64,000 nt of DNA from Asterias rubens. Lineage: Eukaryota. The stretch is taken from positions 19,096,001 through 19,160,000 of the forward strand of contig NC_047071.1 in the NCBI RefSeq assembly GCF_902459465.1, in the 5' to 3' direction. The position numbers were made by a program, and so were the translations under genes. The notes beneath the pieces are model-generated. The model ran no database searches. It saw only the letters and a list, made by a program, of their open reading frames with translations, and was not told where the DNA came from. Shown here in pieces: positions 23,525 through 43,356 of the stretch (its first letter is position 1; every line of letters begins with the position of its first letter).

Positions 23525-26500
23525 ATGGCCAGTAAGTATTCACTTCAAAATAAATGGAGTGTAAGTTATGGAGGACGAAAAGTGGCCAATCAGAATAGCA
23601 GAAAGGCAGATTTTACGTTGTTTTTTTGTACGAGTTTTTCTTTTTTTCTGCTTTTCCGCTACCTGAAAAGCAGATTGAATTTTTTGTGAAAATGCATTTT
23701 CTTCTTTTCTATTATTTTGTCTGTTACCAGAAAAGCATGTTTTACTTTATCTCCAAATGCTGGCGGACTAAAAGTGGCCATTCGTTTTTTTTTTATTTTT
23801 TTTTTTTTACTAGGACAGCCCATGAAGGTTTTGGTTTATTGAACACATCCAAACGTGTCCACAAGGGAAACTGACCGACGTGTTTTTTGTAATGGGAGAA
23901 TCTTATTGGATGTAGTCGTGAACCCTCCACCGGCGTGTACAAAAGTGATTCTTCCAGTACGTACCAACTGACTGACGTGCAATGTAGGCTTATATGCGAT
24001 TGGTTCCCAAACACAAAACACACTTTCTGCACTCGTACAGTAGGCTCTACATCAGTGTGCGCGTGTTATAATGGTTCACGTTCACGGGTGGTCCTTTAAA
24101 CGCAAAAACGCATTGATGGCCACTTTTCGGTCACCTAGATAAAATATGATTTTCCGGTGTCCGAAAGGAGAAAAGAGGATGGCCACTTCTCGGCCGCCTG
24201 TGTAAAATCTGCTTTTCAGTTGGCAGAAAAGCAGAGAAACAGAAAATTGCATTTTCACGAAACGTTAAATCTGCTTTTCTACTTTCCTGGTAGCAGAAAA
24301 GCAAACGGCCACTTTTCGTCCGCCAGCATAAGGAGATAAAGTAAAACCTGCTTTTTGGTAACAGACAATTAGAAAACTACAAAATGCATTTTCGCAAACC
24401 GTTCAATCTGCTTATGTAGAAAAGGAGAACAATTCATAAAACCCATACAATCTGCTTTTCTGTTCTTTTCTGCTAACAGAAAAGCAGCGCAGATGGCCAC
24501 TTTTCGTCCCCCATATTATGATATACTACTGTTGATCACTGACCACAAATATTTGCAACTAAATAGAAACCGAATCATCTTGAAACGGTACTTGTCTTAG
24601 GTGAATTAGGGTAAAAGGACGCGAAAACTGCATAATAGTTCGAGACATGCACATGCACGAACATGTCCCCGTTCGCCCCGCTCGCGAGTTGCGATCAAAA
24701 CTTTCAATATGACGGCGATTTGTACAGCAGTAATAGGCAAACGCAGTCAACAACCGCTAGATTGCGGCCGTGATTTCTCATGTAATTATTGATGCAGGGT
24801 TATGATTTTTGGTTTAAACATTACTTTTGTTCAATTTAAAACACTTTTCATGTTTTTTTATCACTGTAAGTTCGGACCCAAGGGCAAATTAGAGAAAGCT
24901 TAACGCTGCTGTTTGGATGCACTAACACATGTTATTAAGAGATCACCCCCACCTCCCCCACCCCTAAAAAAACACAAACAATTGCTCATACACCAAGCTA
25001 AATTAAAGGTTACCAATCGTTTTATTTTATTTTCGGTGTTTTTTTATTTTTATTATTCATAATTCACGTACAAACAGCATTTTCTTAAATCATTACAATA
25101 TCAACAGTCAGTTACAATATTTTTCATTTAATTGTTATAATTTTTAATGTGTGAATTCTGAGTCAAATAAACTTTAAACTTTAAATTTAAAGTTGCAATT
25201 TTAGAATATAAAGAAACACCATGTACATAAATTAAAATACTGTTAGGCAAAAATTCTTACTGGCACCCAAACAAAATATACCACCAAAATAGGCCTAGAT
25301 AGCTCAGTTGGTAGAGAGCCGGTACGGAGGTTCAAGTCCCACTCAGGTCATTTTTGCCTTGTTCAAGCCCAAATCATTAAAACTTTACCAAGTAATGTTT
25401 TTACTTGAACTTAAATTTTATTACAAACTACATGGATTCACAGGGGAATTTGAGCATAATCTTTCCATTTACAATGCTTTACAGTAATTGAACGCTGATC
25501 CAAAATGGGTAGCACTTTTACGGTAATGAACTGAGGGGTTCCTATTTTGAAAGATGAACTTTGATTTGAAACATTAAAATGTTACTTTGTTAAAAAAAAA
25601 AATATTTTTTAAATGAGGCATTAAGCTTTGTGTAGTGTCTCTTCCTTGCTGAATAAAGGAGAAAAACAGCTCAAAGAAGTTGTCTCACCTCACATGCCAT
25701 TGATCTGTTGGATAAAACAAAAATATGAAAATAAAATTCTTTTGAAAATATAAGACCGTGTTTAAAATGAAAGGGTAGTGGTTATTAATTAAAAGGTAAC
25801 CACAGAAAATTAACTTCAACTTATTGTAAACTAAAGATGGAATTTGGAGGAGGAAACAGGGGCAGGGAAATGCTTTTTTACAAACAATTCATAAGGAAAA
25901 TTGGATAAAATAACATTTTGCAGCCTCATGATGTTGGAAAATTTATCCAAAATACATATTTTGAAAAGTGTTTTCCCTTTGTTTACCACCTGTGGTAAAA
26001 AGAAAGAGAACAGTTACGAAATTTTAGGCTACTTAGAAAACTGTGGGTGATTAACACACATTATATTCATGTAGTAAAGCCCAAGTCCTTCATTGCGGTA
26101 ACAATTCCTTTTTATAATTGACCGAATGGTTTACAGAATTGGTTTACACCGAGTGGCTGTTTAATCAGACAATGTTCTTGAAACAAGAGGAATCCCTAAC
26201 CAACGGAATGTTTTTTTTGTTTTTTTGGGGGGGGGTCGCCAAAGTTTCTTACTTTTACTATAGCGGCGCTGTAGACAGCTTTCTTATAAATCAATTATGT
26301 TTGCAAAACCTGACAGCAATGTTGGATCACCCTCCTGCTCACCTCCAAAAAGGGGAACACACTCTTTGGCCCTCCAATGACTCTAGGAACTGGTGATGAT
26401 TTTAAAAAATTAAGAATTTGTGCCCATCTCCGATCACGAAACTTACGCAGAAGCTTGTTTTGGTCGCGCGACGTGAAAAACCTTTTTATTGGTCGTTTAG

Positions 26501-29500
26501 GCGTCGGCTTCCTCTTTAAACTGCTTAACGTATTAAACAAAAATGCCCTCGCGACCATCGTGCGTCCGCGAATCAGCTAGTCTGTACATAGCCCTGGCGG
26601 CCTTACACTTTCGTATTGTACTACAGTGACGTCCTGAACATCATGGTACCTTTCTGGGGCGGAACATTCGCAGCTTCATAACTCAAATCTTACCTGCAAC
26701 AAGCCACTAATTTCAACAGATTCACACTCCATGGCAGCAAATGTTTTTCTGCGGTGGGTTTTGATCGTCATATTATGTTCTTCACAAATCCGTCATTTTC
26801 ATGAAATAATGCAGCTCCCAACGTTAAGAAATTCAAATTTTTGTTCGTACTCTAACAGTCTGCCGTGTGTACGCAAGACGCACGACGCGCAAATACTGTG
26901 ACATTGTGAGAAAACGATCAAAACGGGAACTTTTTAACGTTGGGAGCTGCATTATTTCACGAAAATGACGGATTTGTGAGGAATATATGAGGACCAAAAC
27001 CCACCGCAGAAAAATGTATGCCGCCACAGAATGTGATTCTGTTGAAATTAGTGGCTTGTTGCAGGTAAGATTTGAGTTATGAAGCTTTGAAAATTTTCCG
27101 CCCCATAAAAGGGCCTTAATAGTTAGGACTCTGTATCTGTGCATAGATGAAGAGTCCTATATAGGGCTAGTCTGTACACAGATACACAGTCTTAACTATT
27201 AAGGCCCGTTTCTGGGGCGGAAGTTTTCAAAGCTTCATAACTCAAATCTTACCTGCAACAAGCCACTAATTTCAACAGATTCACATTCCATGGCGGCATA
27301 CATTTATCTGCGGTGGGTTTTGGTAGTCATATATTTTTCACAAATCCGTCATTTTCGTGAAATAATGCAGCTCCATACGTTAAAAAATTCCCGTTTTGAT
27401 CGTTTTCTCACAGAGTGTTGTCTGCTCTCCGTGCGCGTAGGCGTATACATTCGCGTGCAAGAAGACGCAAGTTGCAAGACGCATGAATTCTTGGGTCACC
27501 GTATCTTGACTGCATGCACAGCGTTAACACGCAAACGCAACGCAAGATTGGCGCGTCGTGCGTCTTGCGTCTTGCGTACACACGGCAGACTGTGAGAATA
27601 CAAACAAAAATGGGAACTACTTAACGTTGGGAGCTGCATTCTTTCATGAAAATGACGGATTTGTGAAGAATAATTATATGACGACCAAAACCCACCGCAG
27701 AAAAATATATGCTGCCATGGAATGTGAATCTGTTGAAATTAGTGGTTTCTTGCACGGGTAAGATTTGAGTTATGAAGCTTTGAAAACTTTTCTCCCAAGA
27801 AATGGTATACAAATATTGAGTGGCTCAGAGTGGGAATGGGAGGAATATTATCGCAAGGTAAAATTTGGACTGTTCCATTTCACGAGGCGAAGCCGAGTGA
27901 AATGGAACAGGCCAAATTTTACCGAGCGATAATATTCCTTCCATTCCACGAATTAAACCCACTCAATATTTGTTTTATGTAACTGACATATAGATCCTTG
28001 TAATTTTAATGTATTTTAAAAGTATGACATTGTGAAAAATCACACAAAAATTTCTGACAACCAAACATCATATAGCGGCCGCGTAGCGGCAACAACGTAC
28101 AAATCGGATCACAACCTTTTGCACAGGTGCTCCTTTGTTTTGGCAGCGGCGCGGCGGCGCTGTACTGCTCAAAAACATTGGGAAAGGATGATCCTAACTG
28201 TTTAATGGGAAATGCTATTCCCCATGGGCGAATAGGTGTTTTTGATCGCCGGTGCGGATAGGAGTTAGTGAATGTCACGTGAATAAAGTTCCACCAATCA
28301 AATGACAAGGATCTGTATGTCAAATTATAAACCCTGATATCCAGGACGTCACTGTAGTATACGTAAGTGTAAAGCCGCAAGGGCTACGAGTCAGCCAGCT
28401 TTTAATTTAGTAGTTTCCCAATCGGGCGTAGATTTTAATAGGTACGGAGCTCCAGGAGTGCCATCTCACATATCGAGTTACCGACATAATGTATCGCATC
28501 AAGACGACTTATTTAATTTAGTGTAATAATGTAACTTACCGACATACTTATCTTGCTGAGTCGACTTAGATAAATGATAAATCGACTTACTGGCATCATT
28601 CATCTCAACAAGTCGACTTAGATAAAATGATAAGTCAACTTACTGACATAGGCCTAATCCGTATCTCAACAAATCCACTTGGGTCGACTAATACTGACAA
28701 AATTGATCTCACCAAGTCGACACACAGAAACTGAGAAGTTGACTTTATACACACTATCCGCACCTCGTCCAACTCTGATTGTATAAGTCAATTCAGGCAT
28801 CTTCTTCAATTTCATTTTATGTAACAAGCAAACTTATTAATTTACTGATTTTGTTTAAAAAGGTTTAATGGCTGTTAGCAAACTGCATGAAGTACGTGTA
28901 AAATATTGTTACTGGCCTCACGTTTTGACCATAGCTACGTGATAAGAATGATAAAGGATAAAAGTTGGTTTTCGGCATAACTATTCATCAAACTATAAGT
29001 CTTTACACAAATAAAACATTCACAAGAAAATTAATGGAAGGTAGCAGACAGCACACAATGGAACCGAGTTTGATAGTGACAATACCAAAAGTGCAACCAT
29101 CAGTCGTTGAACTAATTCTACCTCCATGATTATACTATACGCCGATGGTTATCAAAAGGATACCATTTTATTGCCGCCAAAACCAACCACTCAACGGACC
29201 GGAATCTATGCGCAGATGAAATATTCAAAAGAATATCCATATATTCCCCCCTCGGCTGTACAAAACAGGAAATTCCACCGAGTCTCAAGAATGAAATAAT
29301 AAATCATGCATTCAGTTCGAAAGGATAAAAGTTTGTTTTCGCCATAACTATTCATCAAACTATAAGTCTTTACACAAATAAAACATTCACAAGAAATTTG
29401 TTGTATGGGAGGTAGCAGACAGTACACAATGGAACCGAGTTTATAAATAGTGACAATACCAAAAGTGCAACCATCAGCCGTTGATGTAATACATTACACT

Positions 29501-32500
29501 ATCCGCTGATGGTAATCAAAAGGATTTTATTGTCACCAAACGAACAACTTATATACAACGGACCGGAATCTATGCAGAGACAAATGTTCAAAAGAATATC
29601 CATACATTTTCCCCTCGGCTGTACAAAACAGGAAATTCCACCACGTCTCAAGGGATAATAAATCCAACCAATTACTACGTCTCAAGGGATAATAAATCCA
29701 ACCAATTATATTAAACGGACCGGAATCTATGTACAGATAAAATATTCAAAAGAATGTGCAAACATTCACCCCCCCCCCCCCCCACACCCCCTCGGGTGTT
29801 CAAAACGGCATGGACCACATTACAGCGCGCAACAATTGTATACTGGATTTTCATATTTCAAAGGGCAAGGGTATTTACGATTTGCAAAGGGCACTTCCAT
29901 TGGAAAGTCTAGGGGAAACTTTTTTTGGAAGGGGCACCAACTCAAAGACCAGGGGCAACATGGGCAGTGATGGAGAACGTCCAGGCTGGTAGTCCAGGAG
30001 CTTATGGTGATCCGTAGAAAATAAATGATTAGAAGATGCCACCTAGCTAGATACCTTCTTTAGGTCATACAAAATAAGAAAATACATGTTGGCAAACTTG
30101 AAAATCTGGCAGATGGCGGCCATCTTGGATTTCAAAAGGGCAACTATTTAAGTTGTATTTTTCCTTCAACTTTGGCTGTGAATGTCATAAAACGGTGATT
30201 TTTGTGGCTAGAATTACTTAAATAGCAGTAAAAGGTACAACTGAATTGTTTCAGATGGCGGCCATCTTAGAATTCAAAATGGCCGCCTTTTTATGTATTT
30301 GTTTCCATAACTTGGCAATGGCAATGTTGTTGTAATTTCCATAACTTGGCAATGGCAATGTTGTTGTAAAATCCTGTTTTTTTGGTGACTAAAGTAATAT
30401 TCGCAATGACTATCAAGCTATACAAGCTAGCATTCATATAATTAATATATATATAAGACCAATAGAAACAAATATTGAACCATTAAGTTAAGGCCGCCAT
30501 TTTGAATTTCAAAATTGCCGCCTGTCAAATGCATGTTTGCGCCTGTATCACGGTCTATGAGCCTCACAGAAACTTGGTGTTAGTGGCTATACCCATGTTT
30601 GCATGGTCAAAATATAACTTAAATGGCGTCCATTTTGAAATCCAAGATGGCCGCCCTCTGCCACATCTGTCAGGTTGCCAACATGGTTTTTCTTGTTCTT
30701 GAAAGTCTTATTTAGGTATCTAGCTAGGTGGCATGTTCTAATCATTTATTTTCTACATACGGGACTTAATTTTTGGTCATCAGCTCCCCGACTATGGCGT
30801 TTATTAATGTTTTGCGTTGTCAAAGAGAAGGTTTCAAACAGGAAATTCCACCACGCTGATATTCCACACTGAGAAAGAGTACAATCCCACATTTCAGAAG
30901 CACATCGTTCCCCCCAATGGACCGTTCCGGCTTTCCACTAAGCTCCGCCCACCGCACACGTGAGCAAGACACGTGTACGAACACTCCCAATGACATTCTG
31001 CACGATTCTGCCGCGCGGGCCAAACATACGCGCACGCATGACCGAGTTTGTCCGACCACAATCATTGCTGTGATTGGTCAAATGAGTGAACGCGCACAGT
31101 TTGATTGATAGGCCAAAACGGTCCATTGATGTTGCTAGCTCCACATACCTTATATGGATTTAGTTGGAGCGCCAGATTAGCGTCACTAGGTGACGAATTT
31201 GAGGCTATAATTTTGTTATTATAAGACGCCACTTTTTTTCTTTTTTTATATATAGATCGAGATTTGAAGACGACGATTCAGTGGCAGAATCTTGAATTGT
31301 TGACACGTTATGACAACAATGATATGGACGGACTCAAGAATCTCTTCACTGAGGATTGTAAAATTTGGGTAGGGGGATCAGATGATACACTCTACAAACA
31401 GGATGGTAATGGACACTACTGATGAATTTTTTTCCAGTTATGTAATTAAACAATTTCGGGGGGCTAGACTTGGTTACAAGACCTTGGCATGGGGTGGGTC
31501 AATTCAAACAACATAACTAATTATAACTATTGTTGGTAGTTCGCAACACTGAAGGGATCAATTCAAAATAACGTGCGTTACTGATCCTTGTTTTGCTTTC
31601 CGTTAAGGAGAATGGACGAGAAAGTGTAGATTCGTGAATAGAACATTTTTATAACTATTTTGCAAAAAAAAATTGTATACTTTAGTGCACGCATCATTAT
31701 CGAGTACAACGTCAGTTTACTCAGCTAGCAATAAATTGGGATTCTTAAGTTGAGAAAAAAAGTGTGGATTCTAAATAAAGAAATTAATTTTAAAATATAG
31801 ACTAGTAAAAGCTCGTTGAATCTCGTATATATCTTCTATGAATTATACAGATGTCCCCAGGTTGCTGCGTGCTGCGCGAGCAGGAGGTGCAAAGTACAAG
31901 CGCGAAACTGATGAAGTCGGACCACCAGGCACTGATGGCACGGTGTATGAGAGAGGACGTTTTTTAGCCATTGGACCGGATGGGTCATCGTCTGTATCTT
32001 CCGGCAAGTACGTCATCATGTCGTTTTTTTTTTCCAAAATCCCTTCCACTTTGGGCTTCGAGTTGACCCCATTTTATAAAATGTACCACCAGTACTTTAT
32101 AATTGCACAAATTCTCATACGAAGACTCTGACAAAATGTCAGAAACACAGTCTCGAAGACGCCTAACACAGACATGTTTCAACGTTTCGAGCATGTACGT
32201 AAAGCTAGCATGAATATCAGACAAACTAACTTCCGGGTGTAGGCCTATACAGCATAAAACTTTGTTGGGAGAAGTGCTGATTCTTGTGTCGCCTCGACGA
32301 TTCGAACCGCTCAAAAAATAATAGTGAGCGTTACAGCTGCTTTTCATCCGTTGTTGTACCGTTGCAGTACGAATAGGAATCACTGACTTTATATTATCAT
32401 TTTGAACTTTTACACTCCTTTTTAAAGGGTTTCTTGAAAATAATTATGTTATTTCAGGCGCCGCCCATCCCATAGGGGATGTAAACAAAAAAATGTTTCT

Positions 32501-32823
32501 TAGTAGTGCAGTTGCCACTTGCAGCCTGACAGATTCACGCCAAAATTCTCTAAAGATGCGTGGGTCGAAGCTAGCGATTAAAGTAACGAGAATCTTTGTT
32601 AATTAATGTTCTACTAACACACACGTGGTTTCACAGATGGAACTGAACAGATGCCAACTAACCCCCACCCCCCCCCCCTCCCACCACCACCAATAATTAT
32701 TCTTCATTTTCATTTCACAGCTATCTTAGCATCTGGAAAAAAATAAATGGAGAATACAAACTGCACCAGACGCACATTAAAGGACCACCTGACCTTGTCA
32801 GTCCGATGGAGTGTCATACTTAA
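23525..32823 (+). CDS. NTF2/SnoaL-like (DUF4440-type) small protein, copy 1; exons 23525-23531, 31256-31405, 31851-32007, 32721-32823 (138 aa)
   Basis: CACC-ATG GCC A|gtaagt micro-exon. Spliced protein: MANRDLKTTIQWQNLELLTRYDNNDMDGLKNLFTEDCKIWVGGSDDTLYKQDDVPRLLRAARAGGAKYKRETDEVGPPGTDGTVYERGRFLAIGPDGSSSVSSGNYLSIWKKINGEYKLHQTHIKGPPDLVSPMECHT. The DMDGL..LFTED, VYERG and Y..IWKK motifs are typical of SnoaL-like/DUF4440 proteins. Linking exon 1 across a 7.7-kb intron rests on its identity with exon 1 of copy 2. Confidence 0.75.
23569..24513. mobile_element. TA-flanked TIR element rich in internal AAAAGTGGCCA and AATCTGCTTTT repeats, in intron 1 of NTF2-like copy 1
   Basis: TA|TGGAGGACGAAAAGTGGCCA ... 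TGGCCACTTTTCGTCCCCCA|TA. Confidence 0.75.
25291..25400 (+). mobile_element. tRNA-derived SINE head (truncated)
   Basis: Pol III A box TAGCTCAGTTGG (25300-25311) and B box GGTTCAAGTCC (25329-25339), but no anticodon arm. Confidence 0.6.
26645..27808. repeat. ~1.2-kb imperfect palindrome built from four alternating copies of a ~200-bp arm (inverted dimer of a fold-back element)
   Basis: The arm GCTTCATAACTCAAATCTTACCTGCAACAAGCCACTAATTTCAACAGATTCAC...GCAGCTCC occurs at about 26650(+), 26930(-), 27200(+) and 27620(-); arm 1 pairs best with arm 4 and arm 2 with arm 3. Confidence 0.85.
27809..27973. mobile_element. Hairpin MITE centred on CGAGGCGAAGCCGAG
   Basis: ACAAATATTGAGTGG...CCACTCAATATTTGT arms; a related hairpin (CGAGGCGGAGCCGAG) lies at about 35830-35892. 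Confidence 0.7.
28470..28790. repeat. Degenerate short-period repeats of an AAGTCGACTTA motif
   Basis: At least 8 imperfect GTCGACTT/GTCAACTT cores occur in about 300 bp. Confidence 0.6.
28953..29750 (+). repeat. Degenerate ~370-bp tandem duplication (about 2.2 units)
   Basis: AAGGATAAAAGTT..TTTTCG.CATAACTATTCATCAAACTATAAGTCTTTACACAAATAAAACATTCACAAG occurs at about 28953 and 29322; AACGGACCGGAATCTATG occurs three times. Confidence 0.85.
30011..30762. mobile_element. Fold-back element with ~130-bp TIRs, rich in AAGATGGCGGC/AAATGGCCGCC motifs
   Basis: GTAGAAAATAAATGATTAGAAGATGCCACCTAGCTAGATACC is mirrored at 30715-30757; no clear TSD was found. Confidence 0.7.
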
Positions 32824-33123
32824 CGGACACTTGGATAATTAATAAGCAGTTCTTGTAAAGCGCATAATATTAAAAAAAGTCTCTACGTGATTAAAAATAT
32901 TGGTTTTTAAGTTTAGATTTAAATTGTTCTAGCGAAACCCATGAAACACAACGGAATGGTCCTTATTTAGGGCAACATTATTTTATAATCTTTAATCCTA
33001 GACAAAATTGAGTTTGCATTATAACGAACAAATTAGTACAAATCCAGTGCAACTCTTTTTATATAAAATAAACTGTCTGTGATCGTTGTGAAATGGGAAA
33101 TACTTGCGGATACTCACAACTAA

Positions 33124-33579: not shown

Positions 33580-34120
33580 CATTATCATTTGCGCGTTAAT
33601 TAAAGCTTATTTGTTTGCTCAATTAATTAAGTTTTTAGTTTCATCTATTTTTAAGAGCCCATTGACAACTATACCGCTGTTGTACTTGCTGGCAGAGTGT
33701 TTTCTTGTACACTCTTAACCAAATCTTTGACCGCTGTTGATTGACACTAAGACAATTACATCGTAGGCCTGCATGTACTTGCCATCATGGCATTGTGTTA
33801 AAAAAGAACTTCTTTAAACAAATTTAATTCCACTCGATGCCACATAAACTGTTTATGTTCGATCACGATGCACTTCCAATGAGCGAGTCTTGCAAAGATA
33901 AAACCATTCAAGAACAGATTAATGCCTCCAAGCACATAAAATATTCGTTGCGAGGCACTGGTATATTGGTCTCAAACATTTCAACCACGTAAATTTGGGG
34001 CAATCTTTAGTCATCAGGTACCCTTTTTTCAAGAGAAAATAAGTAAAAAGAGAACCAACATTAAACATACAATGATGACGATAACCACCAAAAAGTGTGA
34101 CATGAGAACCAACAGATTAA

Positions 34121-34361
34121 AGGCACTAGCTGTACACGTTTGGTAATTAAGACCAGTATCCCATAAGCATACAATAACAATCCTGTGAACATTTGGGTTC
34201 AATATTGGTCATCGAAATTACCTCTTTCTCAAAAACTACGTTACTTCAGAGGGAGTCGTTTCCCAAAATGTTTATACTATCAACAGCTCTCCAATGCTCG
34301 TTACCAAGTCAGTTTTAAGTTAATATTTGCCTTAGGTAATTACCAAACGTGTACCTTCCCT
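34121..34361. mobile_element. Degenerate, internally deleted family A-related MITE
   Basis: TTAA|AGGCACTAGCTGTACACGTTTGGTAATT ... AATTACCAAACGTGTACCTTCCCT|TTAA. Confidence 0.65.
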
Positions 34362-34837
34362 TTAACGTGACTCTGGGAACCCAATCATGTTAACTATGAT
34401 AAGCATATCGACCCGACACCTTTCATTTTTGAGAGTGCCCAATTGGAGTGTGTTTGCCTTTTCACTGATAACAATTTGACGAACCTCTATAACAGTAATA
34501 TATGCAAATATATTCAAACAAAAAAAGGTGTTATAAGAAGTCTGATTATCTATATTGTAATGCTCAATAAATATTAATGTTTGACTAGTCGATGGTTATT
34601 CCTGTCCGTTTTTGAGTCACTCAAATGTCTTGAAAAAGCCTTAAACAATGCTGTAACCTCATAATATAGAGGGTATCTTGGTTTGAAGAAAGAACTCTGT
34701 TTGTAGGGCCTAACTAATGTTTTGTTGTATGTTTGTGGGTACTATTGGGCGAGAGTTGGGCGAAGTGGCGCGTACCCATTTGCTTGTTTCTAATGACTTC
34801 ATCGATTAAGGCCTGTGCCATATTTCGGGGAGAACAC

Positions 34838-35064
34838 TAGACTTGACTCAAGTCCTAATCCCGTGCCATCCCCAGAAAACTACTGTTTTGTGATGCTCTT
34901 CGTTCCCAAACCTGTTCCGCACGCGGGACAGGCATTCTCGGGACCACATTTTGACGGCGAGCGCGCAGCACTGTATACTGTGTATGCTACGGGTTGTTTG
35001 ATAGTAAGTTGGCGTGATATGCTTAAGGGCCTCTCACACGAGAATGGGACTTGAATCAAGTCTA
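34838..35064. mobile_element. TAG...CTA MITE with a perfect 9-bp TSD (AcademH- or MULE-type)
   Basis: TIR TAGACTTGACTCAAGTCC; GGAGAACAC is duplicated at 34829-34837 and 35065-35073; same TIR family as 49011-49124. Confidence 0.85.
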
Positions 35065-35341
35065 GGAGAACACCGGTCATGTTTAAACACGGGTGAAAAA
35101 TTATTTCCTGTAATTAAAATTCGAAGTAAACATTGTTCCATAGAGTACACTGTAAAGTTCGCGTTTGTAAAAGGGACTGGACACTCCCCAGCCATTTCCA
35201 GACACTGTGGCCCTTTTGAAACCACGGCTTCGGCTTTGGATTTGGCTCAGGCTACGTTCTCTTGTCTGAAACCCTGAGCGCGTAATAGGCAAAGCACGCG
35301 CAAATTTTCAAAACAACCACAGTGCCAAGCTAGCCTAAGCC

Positions 35342-36592
35342 TAGCCCACCTTATTGAGCTGTTAATGGCTCCGCTTTTAACATCGGTCTCATCACTGTCA
35401 CCATTACAGCCCACCTTCGATACATGTCTTAAACGCTAAGTTTTCAAAGGTCGCAAAATGCGTGGTAGTTTGTGTAAATTTCTCCCATTTAAAAAAGTCC
35501 TATACTACTCCAACATACCTCATTTTATTCCTTACATTTGTGGAATTAATATGACGCATGTCAGGGCTAACTAAATGATGACTTTGTCCAGATGTGATGA
35601 TTTGAAAATTGGTCCAAAAAATCGTGTACAAAAATTACATTTAACGTGACATGTGCTTGGGCGCCGCCATGTTTTAATGATTCTCCTCCTGTTGATCGTG
35701 GGCGCCCGGCAAATCTTGCAAGTCATGAATATCCATAAGGTGACGTCATGATCGCTAGGCTTATGTGCGTGTTCAGTAATATACACATAATGAATGTTTA
35801 TGAGTGCAATGGTGCGAATATGTACATGAGTTGAAAGATGGAATGTTCTATTCAACGAGGCGGAGCCGAGTTGAATAGAACATTCCAGCTTTTAGAGACC
35901 AGCTTTTAGAGACCTTTTCTATTACAATGTCACAGCCCAAGTTTTTGCCAAACGAGGTTTGGGAAACTGTGGAAAGCCATAAATGCAAAACTACGACCGC
36001 TAGCTACAGTTTGTAACAATGCTACACCAAATATAAAACTGAATAATGTATAAGGTGACGTAGCGATGCGCTGTATCTGGAAACTACCACCGCGCAGTGT
36101 CACCTCATACATATTCATATTTACTTTGTACACCACACAAATTGATAAATTAGCGTAGCCATACCGCGTCACGTGACATTACCTCTTGGATATTCATGAC
36201 TTGTAAGATTTGCCTGGTGCCCTGACTTCTCACGTCCAACAAGAGGAGCATCATTAAAACATGGCGGCGCCCAAGAACATGTCACGATAAATGTAATTTT
36301 TGCACACGATTTTTTGAACCAATTTTCAAATCGTCACATCTGGACAAAGTCATCATTTAGTAAGCCCTGTTATGTGTCATAGTAATTCCACAAAATGTAA
36401 GGAATAAAATGAGGTATGTTGGAGTAGTAAAGGACTTTTTTAAATGGGAGAAATTTGCAATGAAACTACCACGCATTTTGCGACCTTTGAAAACTTAGCG
36501 TTTGAGACATGTATCGAAGGTGGGCTGTAATGGTGACAGTGATGAGACCGATGTTAAAAGCGGAGCCATTAACAGCTCAACAAGGTGGGCTA
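35342..36592. mobile_element. 1.25-kb fold-back element with ~430-bp TIRs, TAG...CTA termini and a perfect 9-bp TSD
   Basis: TAGCCCACCTT...AAGGTGGGCTA; GCCTAAGCC occurs at 35333-35341 and 36593-36601; the empty site is seen in the paralogous sequence at about 23270-23300. Confidence 0.92.
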
Positions 36593-36709
36593 GCCTAAGC
36601 CGAATCTGGAGCCGAAGCCGTTGATTCGAAAAGGGCGTATGTCAGTGCTCACTAGAACCACCTCGTGCACGTGTAGACCGCACAGCCGTCCCGCATTGGG
36701 ACGCGCACA

Positions 36710-37423
36710 TAGTCTTGCCCCAAGATTGCTCGATATTGGATAGTGTACTGCGTTCAGTTCTGACTCGCTAAAGCGCGCCCTCCTTTGACTGGTTTGTGGG
36801 GCAAGACCATAGAGCTATAGACCTTTCTTTTGTTGATAAACAAACCGCCTTGGTTGGCATGGTCGGCCGAATGTTAGTAAAACACTCAATCGTAAAAACA
36901 GATGTTTCCACAAAATTCAACATTTTCTGCAAATTTTCATATAAATAAAATACCTCTCATGATAAGTTGCTTTGTTTTAAACAACATCAATTGAAACACT
37001 GTTACCAAAAATAGCGATCTATTCTTGATTTGCACTTTCTATAGTTTTCCAATCTGGGTTGGCACAAACTCGGGCTGTGACGTTGCAAAAGAAAGGTCTA
37101 TAGCTATAGCTCTATGGGCAAGACTAGACTCCGGCGTAGTCTAGCTCGCTAGACTACGCCGGAGACTAGTCTTGCCCCACGAACCAGTCGATGGAGGGCG
37201 CGCTTTAGCGAGTTACAAAGACCTTTTCGCAAATACCGGGGCGCGCGCGTAAAGCTTGGAATTAGGTGCATTGTGGTCTAGCTGGTGTCCAAATTTGATC
37301 CATATATATCCCACAATGCACCTCATTCAACAGTCTGCGCTTGCGCATTGGTATTTGCGATAAGGTCTAGCTTAGCGCAGTACACTATCCAATATCGAGC
37401 AATATCGTCTCGGGGAAAGACTA
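36710..37423. mobile_element. Composite TAG...CTA fold-back element (degenerate 9-bp TSD) containing a nested insertion
   Basis: TIR TAGTCTTGCCCC..GATTGCTCGATATTGGATAGTGTACTGCG; flanks ACGCGCACA and ATGCACACA (7/9); internal mirrored arms at 36763-36807 and 37169-37213. Confidence 0.7.
36808..37116. mobile_element. Nested CATAGAG...CTCTATG element with an 8-bp TSD (P- or hAT-type MITE)
   Basis: TIR CATAGAGCTATAG..ACCTTTCTTTTG; GGCAAGAC is duplicated at 36800-36807 and 37117-37124. Confidence 0.85.
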
Positions 37424-37724
37424 ATGCACACACAGCTCAGATTTATGCTCGATGGTGGTTTATTTTAAAGCCACGGACAAAGTAGCACTAGAGCTTGGTT
37501 AAAAAGAATTTGCCGAATTTGACCCTGCTATTTGAACTATCCCCTCTTTTATTATAAAAGGGCCATGCACAATCCTGCCAGCCTTTAAACACATGACGTG
37601 TAATGTTCCCAGTGTCACGTATCGTACAATCACACACACCAACAGACCCAGCTCTAAAATAGCCGTCGCAGAACAGCAAGAACTCTCCACACACAGCTCT
37701 TTGTAACAAACAACCTGCCACACC

Positions 37725-38788
37725 ATGGCCAGTAAGTATTCACTTCAAAATAAATGAGGATTGTAGAATGATGCCACAGGGAGTGGACACACTCATCGGA
37801 AACCATGGTAATTGACACTACTCGGGGAGGTGGCTAGTATTGGTTCCAAGACCTTCGCATGGGTCAAGAGATAATTTTTAGTGTTATATCCTTGGTTGTA
37901 GGCACTGGACACTATTGGAAATTACTAAAAAGGAATTGTTAGCATAAAAACTTACTTAGTAACGAGCAATGGAGAGATGTTGATAGTATAAAACATTGTG
38001 AGAAACGGCTTCTTTTGAAGTAACGGATTTTTGAGTAAGGGGTAATTTCTCACTCAAATAATAAATGACTTCAGCATCTGAAAGCAAACAATTTTTAGGA
38101 ACAAGGGTGTTTTTTCTTTCATTATTCTCATGCAACTGCGATGACCAACTAAGTCCAAATGTTCACATAGTTGTTACTGTATGCAAATGTTGGGATACAC
38201 CAAGTGAGAATACTGCTCGCTGGCCATCGCACAATGAGAAAATATCTATAAACACACAAACACACAAAACGATGAAAATGAATGCCCAAAAATTTGAAAG
38301 GCTTTAAAATAATTTAATCTACGTTAAAGTTCATTGCTATTTTCTATGAATTCTCTTTCATGCAGTTGTCCCCAAGGTGATGGGTGGGATGCGTGACATG
38401 GGCGCTACCTCGTGCCAGCTTATAACTGATGAAGCCGGACCTCTAGGGGGCTCTGATGACACGGTGTATGAGAGAGGACATTATATATTCGGTAAAGCGG
38501 ATGGGTCAGAGTTAGCTGTCGGCAAGTACGTCATCATGTCGTTATTTATTTTAGAAATTCCTCCCAACTTTCGAGTTTACCCCATTTGTATAAGCTGTAC
38601 CGCCAGTAATAAAATAAAAATAATAAATAATAATAAAAAATAACACATGCGTGGTTTTATAGATATTGAAAGTTGCTGGTCTGAAACCCAGGTATTTATT
38701 TTCATTCCACAGATATGTTGTCATCTGGAAAAAGACAAGCGAAGGTTATAAAATGCACATTGACATTTTCAACGACAACACGGCTTAA
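37725..38788 (+). pseudogene. NTF2/SnoaL-like copy 2 with a deletion of most of intron 1 and the 5' half of exon 2; exon 1 at 37725-37731, exon-2 remnant at 37756-37807, exons 38366-38525 and 38713-38788
   Basis: Exon 1 and the start of intron 1 are identical to copy 1, then fuse directly to GAG GAT TGT AGA ATG ATG CCA CAG GGA (EDCRMMPQGVDTLIGNH) with no acceptor. Exons 3-4 are open (VPKVMGG...TVYERGHY...GKYVVIWKKTSEGYKMHIDIFNDNTA*). Exon 1 to exon 3 skipping would be in frame. Confidence 0.75.
37900..38220. mobile_element. Degenerate family A MITE in intron 2 of NTF2-like copy 2
   Basis: AGGCACTGGACACTATTGGAAATTAC followed by family A interior; the 3' TIR is missing. Confidence 0.7.
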
Positions 38789-39702
38789 TTGTGGTCAATC
38801 CTATGGTTGTCCAAACTTATCGGCGAGTGGATCTAAATGCGAATGTGAAACACAACGGACCCTTACTGCTCCCAAAATTATGTAGGGCCAAAATTGTCAA
38901 CTATACGCTTTGTGTAGTTGACAAAATTTGAATTAAAGGATAACAAACAAATTATTACAAATCCAGTGCAACTCTTTTAATGTATAATACATTGCCTGTG
39001 ATCTTTATGTGAAATGGGACAAGCTAGCGAATACTCACAACTAAAATCAATTGTTTCGAACACAAACTAATGTGAGTTTGCATTACAAAGTTATTGATCG
39101 TTTTTACGAAATGAATTCCATGGTACCGTATAGGCTTCAAACAAAAGAAACGATGTTTTCTTATAGGTAGAACAAAGAACATCGTATAGAACGGGATTGA
39201 ACCAATGACCTCCGGATTAATGTGCAGGTGTTCTGGACAAATCTGTCCCCGGATATTCTGTCATAGGAAAGTTTTGGAGGAGGAGGATTCAAACGAGGGC
39301 GCTTTCAGGAGAATTTTGTACACAGTTTGCCATATCTGTGGGGGGGGGGGGGGGGGGTGTGGGTCCAGAATCTACTGTCAACTGAATTATATAGTCCTTT
39401 GTTGGCGGTCTCCCTAATTTTGGCAATATCTTTGTTCGGTTTTTTTTTCTCGCTCTCCCAGAAACATGGAGAGTGACTTCGAGTGTTTTTTCCCTCTTCG
39501 CTGATTTGCCTTTTCGCTGATATAGGCATATAAAAAAAAAATATGTTCAAATAAGCTATTGTTGTGAATAGAAGTATTGTTTTATCTGTTTTAATGAATC
39601 CTAAATAAGTATTAATTTTGGACTAGTAGATGTCATTCCTGTCTGTCTTTGAACCGCTCTAATCTCCTGGAAAACCTTTAAAAAATGCGGTCACTTCATT
39701 AA

Positions 39703-40329
39703 AGGCAGTGGACACTATTGGTAATTACTCGAAATAATTGTCAGCATAAAACCTCACTTGGTAACGATTAATGGGGAGATGTTGATAGCATAAAACATTG
39801 TGAGAAACGGCTCCTTCTGAAGGGACGTAGTTTTCGAGAAAGAAGTATATTTCCACGAATTTGATTTCAATACCTCAAGTTTAGAACTTGAGGTCTCGAA
39901 ATCAAGCATCTAAAACTACACAACTTCGTGTGACAAGGGTGTTCTTTTATTTCGATCATATCTCACAACTTCGACGACCAACTGAGCTCAAAGTTTCAGA
40001 GGTTTGTTATTTTATGCATATTGTACCATTCGTGCCAATCAGCCAGTAGAGGGCGCCAGCACGGCTCCGCGGTGGAGCTAGTTGCTGGTTGGCCCCCTGC
40101 TGGAAGATTGGTAAACCCGCTCGCCTGGAGATGTTTTTTCTGTGTCTAGATTTGTGAATTTATAAAGATTGGACGTCTGGAATAAAACGGTAAGGAATTC
40201 AAGCAGAAATACTGGTTTTTAGTGTTTTTCATTGCTCCGTATTGTTGTGGTTATTGACACAGGATTTTTGTGTTACAATAATATGTGATAAGACTGGTCT
40301 TTGACAATTCCCAATAGTGTCCACTTACT
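39703..40329. mobile_element. Family A MITE interrupted by an insertion
   Basis: TTAA|AGGCAGTGGACACTATTGG ... CCAATAGTGTCCAC..|TTAA, with an insertion at 40022-40277. Confidence 0.8.
40022..40277 (+). mobile_element. Probable solo LTR
   Basis: 256-bp insertion with TGTACCA...TGTTACA (TG...CA) termini and an internal AATAAA; the TSD is imperfect (ATAT vs ATAA). Confidence 0.5.
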
Positions 40330-40788
40330 TTAAGAGGATGTCCACTGTCTTTAAGAGGATGTCTTAGTTTAACAAACGAACTCTGCTTGTAGGGCCTAAC
40401 TTGTTTTGTTGTAAAACAATGTTTGAGTGTTTTTGTACAGCTTATTTTTGTTTGCTCAATTAACTAAGTTTGTATCTAATAGACCATTGACAACTAAACC
40501 GATTGTGTACATGCAGGCATGGTGTTTCTTATACACCCATGACCGCTATTGATTCTTGATTGACACCCCTCTAGAGTGTGTGGTATGGTCCAACTTAGGG
40601 TATCGTGGTAATGAGCAGACCAGTGGGTACGATGTGGTTAAGCCAATGACATCGTATGCCTTCATAAACTTTCCTCACTGCAGGGTGTTAAACAAATTCT
40701 TTTTTTAAACAAATTGAATTCTCACCCCCCCCCCCCCCCCCCAACTCATGCTAGGAGACTATATCAGCACTCAATGCCACTTAAATGT

Positions 40789-40922
40789 ATATAGAAAAGT
40801 TTGCGGTAACACCATGTAATAACAATCTCGAAACGTCGAGTTAATCCAACGGTTCTTTTCAGAACCACCCCAACTCATTTAGAGATTGTTATTACATGGT
40901 GTTACCGCAAACTTTTCTATAT
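40789..40922. mobile_element. Hairpin MITE
   Basis: The ~40-bp TIR ATATAGAAAAGTTTGCGGTAACACCATGTAATAACAATCTC is mirrored; fragments (CATGGTGTTACCGCAAAC) also occur near 3490. Confidence 0.75.
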
Positions 40923-41362
40923 CTTACTTCCACCATGCAAAGTTTCAAATCCTACTCGCCACTTAAATGGTTACTATGTCCGATCACAATGCACTTCCAA
41001 TGAGCGTGTCTTGCCAAGATAAAACCATTCAAGAACAGAATAATGCCTATCTACAAGCCAATATGCACATGAATAGTCGTTGCAAGGCACTAGTGTAGTG
41101 GTCTCAAGGTAAATAATGAACACACAAAGTGGGGCAATGTTTAGTCAGGTACCCTTTTTTAGTTAAGACAAAATAAATAAAAAGAGAAGTAAAATTAAAC
41201 ATAAATGTATTTTGATACAACGATGACGATATAACCAACAAAATGGAACACGCAGCAAATTAAATGAGTCTGGGAACCTATAATCACAATGACTACGATA
41301 AAGCAAAGCATCGGCCCGACACCTTTCATTGTTCAGTTTGAACCACACAAGCATAAAGAAAC

Positions 41363-43356
41363 ATGGATGGTAAGTCTAATATTATTTAAAATAAATTAGG
41401 GGTTCGAAGCTTAATTTTGGCATGTTTTTGCTCTATTTAGATTGTAGTTTTTTCCACCCCATGTGACAGAAAGGTCACACCATTAACACTAACCACGCGT
41501 GATGATTTTGCGTGAACTTTTCTGGTGTATTTGTAACTAAAAAGTCGTAGCTAACTAGTACCTGTATAGAAGGGAAAATCATTCAGTGTTTGAAATGTGG
41601 CATGTTGTACCCCTCCTTTTGTGTCTTTTTGTTCTGAGAATTTTAGGAATTCTTGGGGTGTTTTGATTTCTTTCATTTGATGTTTTCTTAAGTATTTTAC
41701 TTTGTATTTCTCTATCACATGTTTGGATTTCTTGATTTCCTCTTAGCCTATAGTGTAACATTTCATTTTTGGTAATTGTACATGTGTGTTTTTATGTTTC
41801 TATTTAGCGACATGAGCACTATAGATTTGTGCGCTTTGCAAATTGTCAATGTTATCTTTATTATTTGTAAATTAATCTCATTATTATAACTTACAGACAT
41901 TACGACTGCGATCGAAAAAAGGAAAGAGGAGTGGAAGAAGCATTTCTTAAATAATGACATGGTATCAACTAGTCAGATCTACTCATTTGACTGCAAGCTG
42001 ATGCCGCAAGGAAAAGAAACCATCTTAGGGAGGGAGAGTAAGTTTGCTTTTCATTATTCCTATTTGTTTTGTACTCAACATCAACCAAATCATTATCAAT
42101 CTGCCAAACCAAACACTTGTGGGTTCGCTCTAAATGTTTCATGTATGAGCCCTGGGTCTCAAGCGGATAGACAAGCTAACCGTTATGCTCATAGGCTGGG
42201 AAAGACCTATATGATGATTCCCGCCGAATTGGGGTATTCTTTAGATGATCTTCCCAGCTCGGCAAAGCCCCGCAAATGAACATAAACGCCAAGCTGGGGA
42301 TAGCTAATCTCTCTTACTCAGCCGCATTCGTGTGACGGCTATGGTTTATGAATTGTTGCACAAATTAATCAGTTTTGATTCAAGTACCTAATATGACGAA
42401 AATGTTGTCAATTCGGTGAGAGAGTACGCAGATAATGTCTTGAAACAACAAGACAAAGAACGAACTGGACTGAAATAATTGGGCAGGCCCGTCTGGAATC
42501 AGTACAAAAACAACAAAAATCTGCACACGAAATGAGTCAAACCATGCACCATCAATAAAAATGAACACTCAACACGTTTCTTTGTTAAATCAGAACCTTT
42601 ATTCCCTCCACACTTATAAAAAATAAATAATATTTCTGATTTACTCATCATTTTTATATACAGCTATACCAAAGGGATTAAGGGACCTACGAGACAAAGG
42701 TGGCTCGTCAGTGGAGTGGAACACTTTAGAGATAGGTCCAATGGATGGCAACGGTGACGTCATCTTCGAACGCGGCGAGTACAAATTTTCAAACCCAGAT
42801 GGTCCCGTGTGTGAAGGAAAGTGAGTATTGATTATTTCAACATGATATTAATATTTGTACAAAATAAACTTGTGGAGTAAGATAGCGTTTAGAATATATC
42901 AATTAATTTGCATTCCCTTTTCCAAAGGCAAGAACTCTTCCAACTGAAGAATCAAAATCGCTTTATTACGAATTCATGGAAGTGACATAGATTGCTTCTT
43001 TGCCAACATTTACCAATGTATAAAAATTATAAAGAATTGCTAGACATAGTTCATGTATCTGTTATTTCAGATCATCTACTCAGTTTTCAACTGAAAAAAT
43101 ATAAAACTACTACTATCGGATGAATTAACTTGGAAGACTTTAAACATTTACATACAACAGTTTCCACAACTCAAAACACATTTGCCTGTGATATAACAAA
43201 CCAGACATTGTGCGCATCATTGACTATAATCGCACTGGATTATACATTTTAATTTCAATTAATAATTTTTTTATTTTTTTCAGGCACTTGGTAATTTGGA
43301 AGAAGGTTTCTGGTGTTTACGAGATGTATATTGATATCTACAATGAAAACAAGTAG
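41363..43356 (+). CDS. NTF2/SnoaL-like (DUF4440-type) small protein, copy 3; exons 41363-41369, 41897-42037, 42664-42820, 43284-43356 (125 aa)
   Basis: Same 7-nt first exon and intron phases (1, 1, 2) as copies 1 and 2. Protein: MDDITTAIEKRKEEWKKHFLNNDMVSTSQIYSFDCKLMPQGKETILGRETIPKGLRDLRDKGGSSVEWNTLEIGPMDGNGDVIFERGEYKFSNPDGPVCEGKHLVIWKKVSGVYEMYIDIYNENK. Confidence 0.85.

What the first reader, a model, noticed from the sequence alone, without database searches (positions are those of the whole stretch)
23525..43356. Tandem family of three intron-containing NTF2/SnoaL-like (DUF4440-type) genes with no familiar vertebrate counterpart
The ORF track misses these genes because each starts with a 7-nt coding micro-exon. 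All three share intron phases 1/1/2 and the motifs DC(K/R).MPQG, (V/F)ERG, GK(Y/H).VIWKK and IDI(F/Y)N. These recall bacterial DUF4440/YybH-like and ketosteroid-isomerase/SnoaL-fold proteins, which are cone-shaped pockets for hydrophobic ligands. Function in animals is not known to me. An old horizontal acquisition followed by intron gain and expansion is plausible but unproven.
Basis: partly seen in the sequence, partly recalled or inferred. Interest (0 to 1): 0.75.

Follow-up and report, generated by a model that had tools for sequence, protein, structure and literature searches.

The report
Starfish cluster of three DUF4440 genes
This stretch of the common starfish genome holds three neighbouring copies of a small pocket-shaped protein gene of unknown function that animals have carried, introns included, since before sponges split off; one copy is intact, one is half deleted and one is changing unusually fast.

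Summary
Window 23525-43356 (Asterias rubens) holds three tandem plus-strand genes of about 125 codons. Only 7 nt of exon 1 are coding, and the intron phases are 1/1/2.

- **Gene A** (LOC117295769) and **gene C** (LOC117295401) are already in RefSeq as "uncharacterized". RefSeq misses gene C's first coding exon.
- **Gene B** is damaged in this genome. A 5.2-kb deletion relative to A. amurensis removed intron 1 and 92 nt of exon 2. An RNA contig joins exon 1 straight to exon 3, in frame, giving 80 aa.
- **Family:** DUF4440/NTF2-like is confirmed. The family profile matches PDB 3hx8 at E=7e-20, and an AlphaFold model (pLDDT 94.7) matches it at TM 0.84.
- **Origin:** recent horizontal transfer is refuted. 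The same three intron positions and phases occur in amphioxus, two sponges and Trichoplax, so gene and introns predate the animal ancestor. The nearest non-animal relatives found are bacterial, often exported, at 30-40% identity. A transfer before animals diversified remains possible.
- **Selection:** gene C is under purifying selection (dN/dS about 0.18). Gene A, seen only in Asterias, has dN/dS about 2.7 and has lost conserved pocket residues.

Function is unknown. The best guess is a cytosolic small-molecule enzyme or binding protein. This is an ordinary member of a known superfamily with some evolutionary interest.

The parts
23525..23531 (+). Gene A (LOC117295769), coding part of exon 1: ATGGCCA followed by GTAAGT, phase 1. 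Intron 1 is 7.7 kb.
   Evidence: Exact splice mapping of RefSeq proteins P0003 and P0173. It has an 89% identical duplicate at gene B's exon 1.
31256..31405 (+). Gene A exon 2 (helices 1-2 and strand 1). It carries DCKIWVGG in place of DCxxMPxG.
31851..32007 (+). Gene A exon 3 (YERG). The GT donor after 32007 gives isoform X1. The alternative GC donor after 32003 gives the frameshifted isoform X2.
   Evidence: The A. amurensis copy uses the same phase-2 position.
32721..32823 (+). Gene A exon 4 (YLSIWKK). The IDIFN strand motif is lost. A 2-bp deletion relative to A. amurensis removes the old stop codon and adds a 13-aa tail.
   Evidence: In the AlphaFold model the tail (residues 132-138) has pLDDT below 50.
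37639..37731 (+). Gene B exon 1: 5'UTR plus ATGGCCA at 37725-37731.
   Evidence: RNA contig X1 record 1 covers 37639-37731 and then jumps to 38366.
37753..37755 (.). Junction of a roughly 5.17-kb deletion relative to A. amurensis (L001 10030-15198). Most of intron 1 and the first 92 nt of exon 2 are missing.
   Evidence: blastn shows window 37369-37753 = L001 9634-10029 and window 37755-38211 = L001 15199-15652. Sequences are compared.
37759..37807 (+). Remnant of gene B exon 2 (DCRMMPQGVDTLIGNH). It is not spliced into the observed RNA.
   Evidence: 98% identical to L001 15203-15251
38366..38525 (+). Gene B exon 3.
   Evidence: RNA contigs of X1, X3 and X5. 96.2% identical to the A. amurensis exon.
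38713..39303 (+). Gene B exon 4. The CDS ends at 38788 (YVVIWKK...IDIFNDNTA) and the 3'UTR runs to at least 39303.
41363..41369 (+). Gene C (LOC117295401), coding part of exon 1: ATGGATG followed by GTAAGT, phase 1. It is missing from the A. rubens RefSeq model.
   Evidence: Pattern scan. The A. amurensis orthologue P0174 uses the identical exon. No RNA junction was seen here.
41897..42037 (+). Gene C exon 2 (141 nt, DCKLMPQG).
   Evidence: The junction 42037|42664 appears in contig X3 record 20, from a sister species.
42664..42820 (+). Gene C exon 3 (FERG).
43284..43356 (+). Gene C exon 4 (HLVIWKK...IDIYNENK, then stop).

Best explanation
This is a tandem cluster, in Asterias rubens, of three paralogues of an ancient animal family of single-domain DUF4440/NTF2-like proteins.

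**What an intact gene makes.** Four exons encode about 125 residues with no signal peptide. The protein folds into an alpha+beta cone: three helices packed on a curved sheet, enclosing a pocket.

**The pocket.**
- Residues conserved from bacteria to animals include N12, F15, Y31, E85, Y89, Y103, W107, K108 and D119.
- Animals add an invariant D34-C35 and R86.
- By inference, most of these residues line the pocket.
- Two buried acidic residues plus a Tyr in an otherwise hydrophobic pocket suggest an acid/base enzyme, or at least a specific binder, for a small hydrophobic molecule in the cytosol.
- The substrate is unknown.

**The three copies are in different evolutionary states.**
- Gene C is intact and under purifying selection.
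- Gene B was disabled in this genome by a 5.2-kb deletion. It is still transcribed as an in-frame message lacking exon 2, giving 80 aa without helices 1-2 and strand 1.
- Gene A is an Asterias-specific duplicate of the gene B type. It evolves several times faster than its own introns and has replaced several universally conserved residues. Its function has therefore changed or is being lost.

**Shown versus inferred.** Shown here: gene structures, family and fold, the deletion, the exon-skipping RNA, intron conservation across phyla, and substitution rates. Inferred: cytosolic location, which residues line the pocket, and enzymatic activity.
For: - **Species and annotation:**
- **Gene models:**
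- **Family:** Pfam DUF4440. Profile against PDB 3hx8: E=7e-20 over positions 4-124.
- **Fold:** the AlphaFold model has pLDDT 94.7. Foldseek gives 3hx8 at TM 0.84, followed by SgcJ and NTF2.
- **Intron conservation:** same columns and phases in five phyla.
- **Tree:** all animal and animal-like sequences lie on one side of a branch against 59 metagenomic/bacterial sequences, SH-aLRT 81.
- **Deletion and exon skipping:**
- **Selection:** gene C dN 0.010 / dS 0.056. Gene B exons 3-4 dN 0.011 / dS 0.131. Gene A dN 0.176 / dS 0.066, with 44 nonsynonymous and 5 synonymous differences. Gene A's nonsynonymous rate is about 5 times its intron rate, P=3e-14.
- **Conserved residues and gene A's departures:**
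- **Pocket positions:** inferred from the substitutions that turned 3hx8 into the CDL2 vitamin-D3 binders, as seen in the alignments, combined with strand periodicity.
Against: - No functional data exist for this family or for 3hx8. No paper on the animal family was found.
- Pocket residues were not checked on coordinates.
- Gene C alone fails Pfam.
- No reads were laid on gene A. Its two isoforms rest on RefSeq models.
- Gene C's exon 1 to exon 2 junction was not seen in RNA. Contigs there start inside the intron.
- Part of gene A's excess divergence could come from B-to-A gene conversion in A. amurensis. At 26 of 47 differing sites the A. amurensis state equals gene B.
- The gene B deletion was seen in one assembly plus one RNA data set and may be polymorphic.
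Confidence: 0.8

Rival explanations
1. Origin by horizontal transfer from bacteria into the lineage leading to animals. All three introns were then gained before sponges diverged. This is the oldest form of the first reader's idea.
For: - The nearest non-animal relatives among the 120 listed hits are all bacterial or metagenomic, at 30-40% identity over the full length. No named fungal, plant or protist protein appears.
- Relatives carrying the GK[YH]VVIWK motif are spread over many bacterial phyla.
- Animal sequences form one group in the tree.
Against: - No donor lineage stands out, and the tree is unrooted.
- The word-indexed search can miss distant eukaryotic relatives, and only 120 of 265 hits were listed.
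- DUF4440 proteins exist in other eukaryotes. An Atlas cluster is mainly nematode.
- Bacterial relatives are often exported (44 of 79 by a crude test), whereas the animal proteins are not.
Confidence: 0.35
2. Recent horizontal transfer into echinoderms, or bacterial contamination of the assembly.
For: Bacterial-type domain. No vertebrate counterpart.
Against: - The introns are spliceosomal, with junctions supported by RNA.
- The flanking genes are animal genes.
- Intron positions are identical in sponges, Trichoplax and amphioxus.
- The locus is orthologous in A. amurensis.
Confidence: 0.01
3. Gene A is simply a decaying pseudogene under relaxed constraint, not a gene under positive selection.
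For: - It has lost universally conserved residues: Y31F, MP to WV, K102N, and D119/I120/N122.
- Its stop codon has shifted.
- One isoform is frameshifted.
Against: - Relaxed constraint predicts exon divergence equal to intron divergence. The exons are 9-14% diverged against 2.5-4% for the introns.
- dN/dS is 2.7 (P=0.026 against 1), and the nonsynonymous rate is 5 times the intron rate.
- The reading frame is open in both species.
- The protein passes Pfam DUF4440 at 32.8 bits and is predicted to fold, pLDDT 86.
Confidence: 0.2
4. The gene B 'deletion' is an assembly error or a rare allele, and A. rubens normally has an intact gene B.
For: - Only one assembly was examined.
- Exons 3-4 still show dN/dS of about 0.08.
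- The A. amurensis copy is intact.
Against: An RNA contig from a run of the same species (no mismatches) joins exon 1 directly to exon 3, as expected if exon 2 is unusable. The breakpoint is clean within otherwise collinear sequence at 93-94% identity.
Confidence: 0.15
5. The proteins are iota-class carbonic anhydrases or ketosteroid isomerases. Both are NTF2-like enzymes whose bacterial relatives share the same loose annotations.
For: Bacterial relatives are labelled 'SgcJ/EcaC (TIGR02246) family' or 'ketosteroid isomerase-like'. Iota-carbonic anhydrases were found among proteins annotated SgcJ/EcaC (PMC8425729).
Against: - None of these sequences has the (H)HHSS motif that marks iota-carbonic anhydrases.
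- The iota-carbonic anhydrase structure 3h51 matches only at TM 0.72 and 16% identity, rank 36.
- TIGR02246 scores are below its cut-off.
- Ketosteroid isomerase chains match only the N-terminal part of the profile, ending at positions 53-68 of 125, at E=0.06-0.6.
Confidence: 0.05

Closest known systems
PDB 3hx8, 'putative ketosteroid isomerase' NP_103587.1 of Mesorhizobium loti (a structural-genomics entry)
   Same: - Same length and fold: TM 0.84, 27-28% identity to the gene C orthologue. The profile match is E=7e-20 over the whole domain.
- Shared residues: Y31, an acidic residue in the FE.G strand, GKYVV(I/V)W(K/R)K and D-I-(F/W)-N.
   Different: - It is bacterial and has no introns.
- It has Ala where animals have the invariant Cys35, and Ser (FESG) where animals have Arg86.
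- Its function is also unknown, so the match names the fold but not the activity.
Pfam DUF4440 (PF14534), in the NTF2-like clan with SnoaL_2 and SnoaL_3
   Same: Gene A scores 32.8 bits, the gene B orthologue 25.5 bits and the sponge homologue 36.5 bits, against a cut-off of 25.2.
   Different: Gene C (P0174, P0082) gets no hit and the fourth paralogue P0077 scores 22.0 bits. The animal clade lies at the edge of the model. UniProt and RefSeq already label members as 'DUF4440 domain-containing' or 'uncharacterized'.
SgcJ/EcaC family (TIGR02246), including iota-carbonic anhydrases (3h51, 7c5v)
   Same: NTF2-like cone of similar size. Many bacterial relatives of the starfish genes carry this label.
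   Different: - Scores are below the cut-off or absent.
- There is no HHSS motif.
- SgcJ (4ovm) is only 12-14% identical.
CaMKII association domain (the NTF2-like domain familiar in vertebrates)
   Same: Same fold class, TM 0.66-0.67.
   Different: 11-12% identity. It is an oligomerisation module at the end of a kinase, not a free-standing 125-aa protein.

Membership tests
NTF2-like superfamily (fold) | An alpha+beta cone: three N-terminal helices packed on a curved antiparallel sheet, about 120-130 residues. | tested here: met
   AlphaFold model of P0174 (98% identical to window gene C): pLDDT 94.7, helices H2-20, H24-28 and H48-60 plus five strands. Foldseek finds 3hx8 (TM 0.84), SgcJ, NTF2 and LinA. 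Gene A isoform X1 is modelled with the same topology, pLDDT 86.
Pfam DUF4440 (PF14534) | Whole-protein score at or above the gathering cut-off of 25.2 bits. | tested here: met
   Met by gene A (P0173, 32.8 bits) and narrowly by the gene B orthologue (P0001, 25.5 bits). Not met by gene C alone (P0174 and P0082: no hit). Single exons give nothing.
3hx8-type DUF4440 subfamily | Full-length profile match, with shared Y31, E85, GKYVVIWK and D119. | tested here: met
   E=7e-20 over positions 4-124. Conservation table. Gene A departs at Y31, K102, V105 and D119.
SgcJ/EcaC family (TIGR02246) | NCBIfam score at or above 33.95 bits. | tested here: not met
   No hit for P0174, P0173 or P0001. 19.0 bits for the Amphimedon homologue. 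25.3 bits even for a bacterial relative.
Iota-carbonic anhydrase | C-terminal (H)HHSS motif and a Thr/Tyr/Ser/His pocket (PMC8425729). | tested here: not met
   The motif is absent from all animal sequences shown. 3h51 matches only at TM 0.72 and 16% identity. Enzyme activity cannot be tested with these tools.
Ketosteroid isomerase | Catalytic Tyr on helix 1, a general-base Asp after strand 1 and an oxyanion-hole Asp on the sheet. | tested here: inconclusive
   Ketosteroid isomerase chains match only the N-terminal part of the profile (ending at positions 53-68 of 125), at E=0.06-0.6. From my memory of the enzyme's sequence, the general-base position falls on the M38/P39 pair. This was not verified on a structure.
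Horizontally acquired gene | Patchy distribution limited to one lineage, nested inside a donor clade, with lineage-specific introns. | tested here: not met
   The family is found in Porifera, Placozoa, Mollusca, Echinodermata, Hemichordata and Cephalochordata. The introns are shared. Animals form one group beside the bacterial sequences, not nested inside them, in an unrooted tree. Transfer before the animal ancestor cannot be tested with these data.

The most novel reading that the evidence does not exclude
The animal DUF4440 clade is an orphan cytosolic enzyme family. It was acquired from bacteria before animals diversified, gained an animal-specific catalytic Cys35 and Arg86, and was later lost in vertebrates and many other lineages. 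In Asterias, a young duplicate (gene A) is being reshaped by positive selection on its pocket. That would suggest an arms race or a new ligand, for example a dietary, microbial or defensive small molecule such as the steroid glycosides that starfish make.
Probability: 0.15. Interest if true: 0.6.

Novelty: new member of a known kind. Interest (0 to 1): 0.4.

Why it matters
- **A conserved family with no known function.** Small NTF2-like pocket proteins are a common source of unusual enzymes. The full-text searches found no study of this animal family. Its conservation from sponges to amphioxus implies a real function that vertebrates do without.
- **A correction to the origin story.** The intron comparison shows that a bacterial-looking animal gene need not be a recent transfer.
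- **A natural experiment for function.** The cluster offers an intact copy, a freshly broken copy and a fast-evolving copy side by side.
- **An annotation fix.** The RefSeq model for LOC117295401 lacks its true start.

Tried and rejected
- **Pfam on single exons:** no meaningful hits. Full-length homologues were needed first.
- **Spliced window proteins:** they could not be passed by reference, so I used database identities instead. P0173 equals gene A isoform X1. P0174 is 98% identical to gene C. P0001 is the orthologue of gene B.
- **Bacterial gene neighbourhood:** 80 loci were clustered. There is no conserved partner beyond a glyoxalase-family gene in 11 flavobacterial loci, so it gives no functional lead.
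- **Iota-carbonic anhydrase and ketosteroid isomerase:** rejected or unsupported.
- **AlphaFold DB cluster search:** organism names were masked, so it was no help on taxonomy.
- **Gene A-type orthologues outside Asterias:** none found, so the changes could not be assigned to a lineage using a third species.
- **Literature:** nothing on 3hx8 or on this family in marine invertebrates. The one sponge mention is a different, Ig-fused protein.
- **Reads:** Read laying allows one call.
- **Model coordinates:** not available to scripts, so the pocket could not be measured.
Full report
**What is in the sequence**

Six-frame motif searches and manual splice-site reading located exon-like blocks on the + strand at about 31.2-32.8 kb, 37.7-38.8 kb and 41.9-43.4 kb. 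A self-comparison showed how the copies relate:
- The second block duplicates the first in exon 3, exon 4 and the downstream sequence.
- An 80-bp segment containing ATGGCCA|GTAAGT occurs twice, at 23525 and at 37725.
- The sequence downstream of the first gene recurs upstream of the third.

Pfam on single exons gave nothing.

I built a profile from the three copies of exon 3 and searched 1.8 billion representative proteins. It returned 55 hits, some of them full-length proteins of 125-130 aa.

**Species and existing annotation**

The relatives carry names that identify the genome as Asterias rubens.
- Gene A is LOC117295769, with isoform X1 (P0173, 138 aa) and isoform X2 (P0003, 111 aa).
- Gene C is LOC117295401 (P0082, 102 aa).
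- A fourth paralogue, LOC117295937 (P0077), lies elsewhere on the same chromosome.

The genes are therefore already annotated as 'uncharacterized', and UniProt calls relatives 'DUF4440 domain-containing'.

**Gene models**

I wrote an exact splice mapper that requires the spliced translation to equal the database protein.

Gene A:
- Exons are 23525-23531, 31256-31405, 31851-32007 and 32721-32823. This reproduces X1 exactly.
- X2 uses a GC donor four bases earlier. That changes the intron phase and stops early.

Gene C:
- RefSeq starts at an internal Met (41959).
- The A. amurensis orthologue P0174 begins MDD and maps to a 7-nt first coding exon, ATGGATG.
- That exon and its flanks are conserved at window 41363-41369.
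- The full A. rubens protein is therefore 125 aa.

**Gene B is damaged in this genome**

- In A. amurensis the orthologue P0001 (127 aa) has exons of 7, 141, 160 and 76 nt and a 5.1-kb first intron.
- In the window, sequence matching L001 up to 10029 is joined directly to L001 15199.
- About 5.17 kb is missing: nearly all of intron 1 and the first 92 nt of exon 2. A 49-nt remnant is left 27 nt after exon 1.
- The remnant cannot be spliced in frame.
- A Logan RNA contig from a run of the same species, with no mismatches, joins 37639-37731 to 38366-38525 to 38713-39303. That is exon 1 to exon 3 to exon 4.
- Introns 1 and 2 are both phase 1, so this message stays in frame. It encodes 80 aa lacking helices 1-2 and strand 1.

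**RNA evidence for gene C**

- The exon 2 to exon 3 junction (42037|42664) is seen in a contig of a closely related species.
- The exon 1 junction was not seen.
- Contigs of about 3.4 kb run from about 42604-42659 beyond 43400. They most likely represent the mRNA of the minus-strand acyl-CoA-synthetase-like neighbour.
- That neighbour's 3'UTR would overlap gene C exons 3-4 in antisense. Depth over those exons is therefore not evidence for gene C.

**Family and fold**

- Pfam DUF4440 passes its cut-off for gene A (32.8 bits), narrowly for the gene B orthologue (25.5 bits) and for a sponge homologue (36.5 bits). It does not pass for gene C alone.
- A 13-sequence profile matches PDB 3hx8 (putative ketosteroid isomerase of Mesorhizobium loti) at E=7e-20 over the full length.
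- The AlphaFold model of P0174 has pLDDT 94.7.
- Foldseek puts 3hx8 first (TM 0.84). Next come vitamin-D3-binder designs built on that scaffold, then SgcJ, NTF2 and others.
- TIGR02246 is below its cut-off.
- The HHSS motif of iota-carbonic anhydrases is absent (for the motif; for the sequences).

**Origin**

The profile search found relatives in the following groups:
- sea stars (Asterias, Acanthaster, Patiria)
- hemichordates (Glandiceps, Saccoglossus, Ptychodera)
- amphioxus
- sponges (Sycon, Halichondria, Amphimedon)
- Trichoplax
- a chiton

It also found many bacterial and metagenomic proteins at 30-40% identity. No vertebrate and no named non-animal eukaryote is among the 120 listed.

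I fetched the genomic loci and mapped the introns.

| Species | Coding exon sizes (nt) | Introns retained |
|---|---|---|
| Branchiostoma | 7/141/154/76 | all three |
| Sycon | 7/144/160/76 | all three |
| Halichondria | 16/141/154/73 | all three |
| Trichoplax | 124/141/163/73 | all three |
| Glandiceps | 154/230 | middle intron only |

The four species with all three introns have them at the same alignment columns and in phases 1/1/2, as in Asterias. The gene and its three introns therefore predate the last common ancestor of these phyla.

In a 98-sequence tree, all animal and animal-like sequences lie on one side of a branch (SH-aLRT 81) against 59 metagenomic sequences.

Prokaryotic relatives occur in many phyla with no obvious donor. 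About half carry signal-like N-termini by a crude test. The animal proteins start directly at helix 1.

Recent transfer is refuted. Transfer before animals diversified, or vertical descent with losses, both remain open.

**Evolutionary state of the copies (A. rubens against A. amurensis)**

| Gene | dN | dS | dN/dS |
|---|---|---|---|
| C | 0.010 | 0.056 | about 0.18 |
| B (exons 3-4) | 0.011 | 0.131 | about 0.08 |
| A | 0.176 | 0.066 | about 2.7 |

- Genes B and C show purifying selection.
- Gene A's exons are 86-91% identical, while its introns and flank are 96-97.5% identical.
- Gene A has 44 nonsynonymous and 5 synonymous differences. The binomial test against neutrality gives P=0.026. Its nonsynonymous rate against its intron rate gives P=3e-14.
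- Using gene B as an outgroup, 26 differences are derived in A. rubens (or were converted in A. amurensis), 10 are derived in A. amurensis and 11 are ambiguous.
- Gene A-type proteins were found only in the two Asterias species.
- Gene A has replaced residues that are near-invariant from bacteria to animals: Y31F, M38W, P39V, K102N, V105S and D119T.
- It has a shifted stop codon. It is still predicted to fold, with a disordered tail.

**Likely mechanism (inference)**

- The positions changed to make the vitamin-D3 binders from 3hx8 mark its pocket. They correspond to family positions N12, 37, 40, 58, Y89, V105/106, D119/120 and F121/122.
- Strand periodicity in the model places Y31, C35, E85, Y103 and W107 on the same faces.
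- Conserved buried Glu and Asp with Tyr residues in a hydrophobic cone are typical of NTF2-like enzymes.
- I therefore favour a cytosolic acid/base enzyme on a small hydrophobic substrate (about 45%) over a passive binder (about 35%).
- Bacterial gene neighbourhoods gave no clue.

**Verdict**

This is a real, mostly well-described observation of an already annotated but unstudied family. The new points are:
- the conservation of its introns across animal phyla;
- the corrected start of LOC117295401;
- the species-specific deletion in gene B;
- the rapid evolution of gene A. An earlier scan note (s1-150274) had already flagged accelerated protein evolution between NTF2-like copies 1 and 2.

Noticed in passing
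window 42604-43927 (minus strand): RNA contigs of about 3.4 kb run from about 42604-42659 through 43400 and beyond. They probably represent the mRNA of the minus-strand acyl-CoA-synthetase/FATP-like gene (last coding ORF 43928-44359). Its 3'UTR would overlap gene C exons 3-4 in antisense.
   Followed up: partly
window 43928-54609 (-) and 55750-63969 (+): Two AMP-binding (fatty-acid transport protein-like) genes lie head to head. The first exon of the + gene hits Pfam AMP-binding. The A. amurensis neighbour of gene C is also an AMP-binding gene.
   Followed up: partly
window 40846-40892 (+): Rfam 'Histone 3' UTR stem-loop' match just above its threshold (35.6 against 34 bits). It lies inside a high-copy repeat between genes B and C, with no histone gene nearby.
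   Followed up: no
window 37794-38375, 39540-40509, 40704-41091: High-copy interspersed repeats. Summed RNA-contig depth is 1e5-1e6, and copies also occur at 34214-34365 and 44362-44712. One lies in gene B's intron.
   Followed up: no
window 51857-51930 (+): A tRNA-Ser(GGA) gene lies inside an intron of the FATP-like gene, within an ORF (51680-51988, minus strand) that holds a long run of Cys codons.
   Followed up: no
window 47890-48745 (-): Two adjacent ORFs with weak hAT-dimerisation and zinc-finger hits. This is probably a transposase remnant in an intron.
   Followed up: partly
window 21829-23185; 35335-35748 with 36174-36599: A roughly 475-bp unit is repeated three times in tandem, just upstream of gene A's exon 1. 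A 414-bp inverted repeat (90.6% identical) lies between genes A and B.
   Followed up: no
L001 and L087 (A. amurensis): Genes B and C are about 37 kb apart in A. amurensis against 2.6 kb in A. rubens. Gene C's first intron is 5.6 kb against 527 nt. This region has undergone large indels since the two species split.
   Followed up: partly
L002 9904-11517 (Branchiostoma); L004 (Glandiceps): Amphioxus has a neighbouring 301-aa gene with two DUF4440 domains. Glandiceps has tandem copies that have lost introns 1 and 3. Tandem expansion of this family recurs in other phyla.
   Followed up: no
window 10036-10410 (-) and 665-1750 (+): An exon with an AAA_2 (ClpX-like) domain and a long coiled-coil ORF lie upstream of the cluster.
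   Followed up: partly
ESM Atlas cluster: The nearest Atlas cluster by features is a 128-aa DUF4440 family that is 96% eukaryotic, mostly nematode. The animal distribution may therefore be wider than the listed hits show.
   Followed up: no
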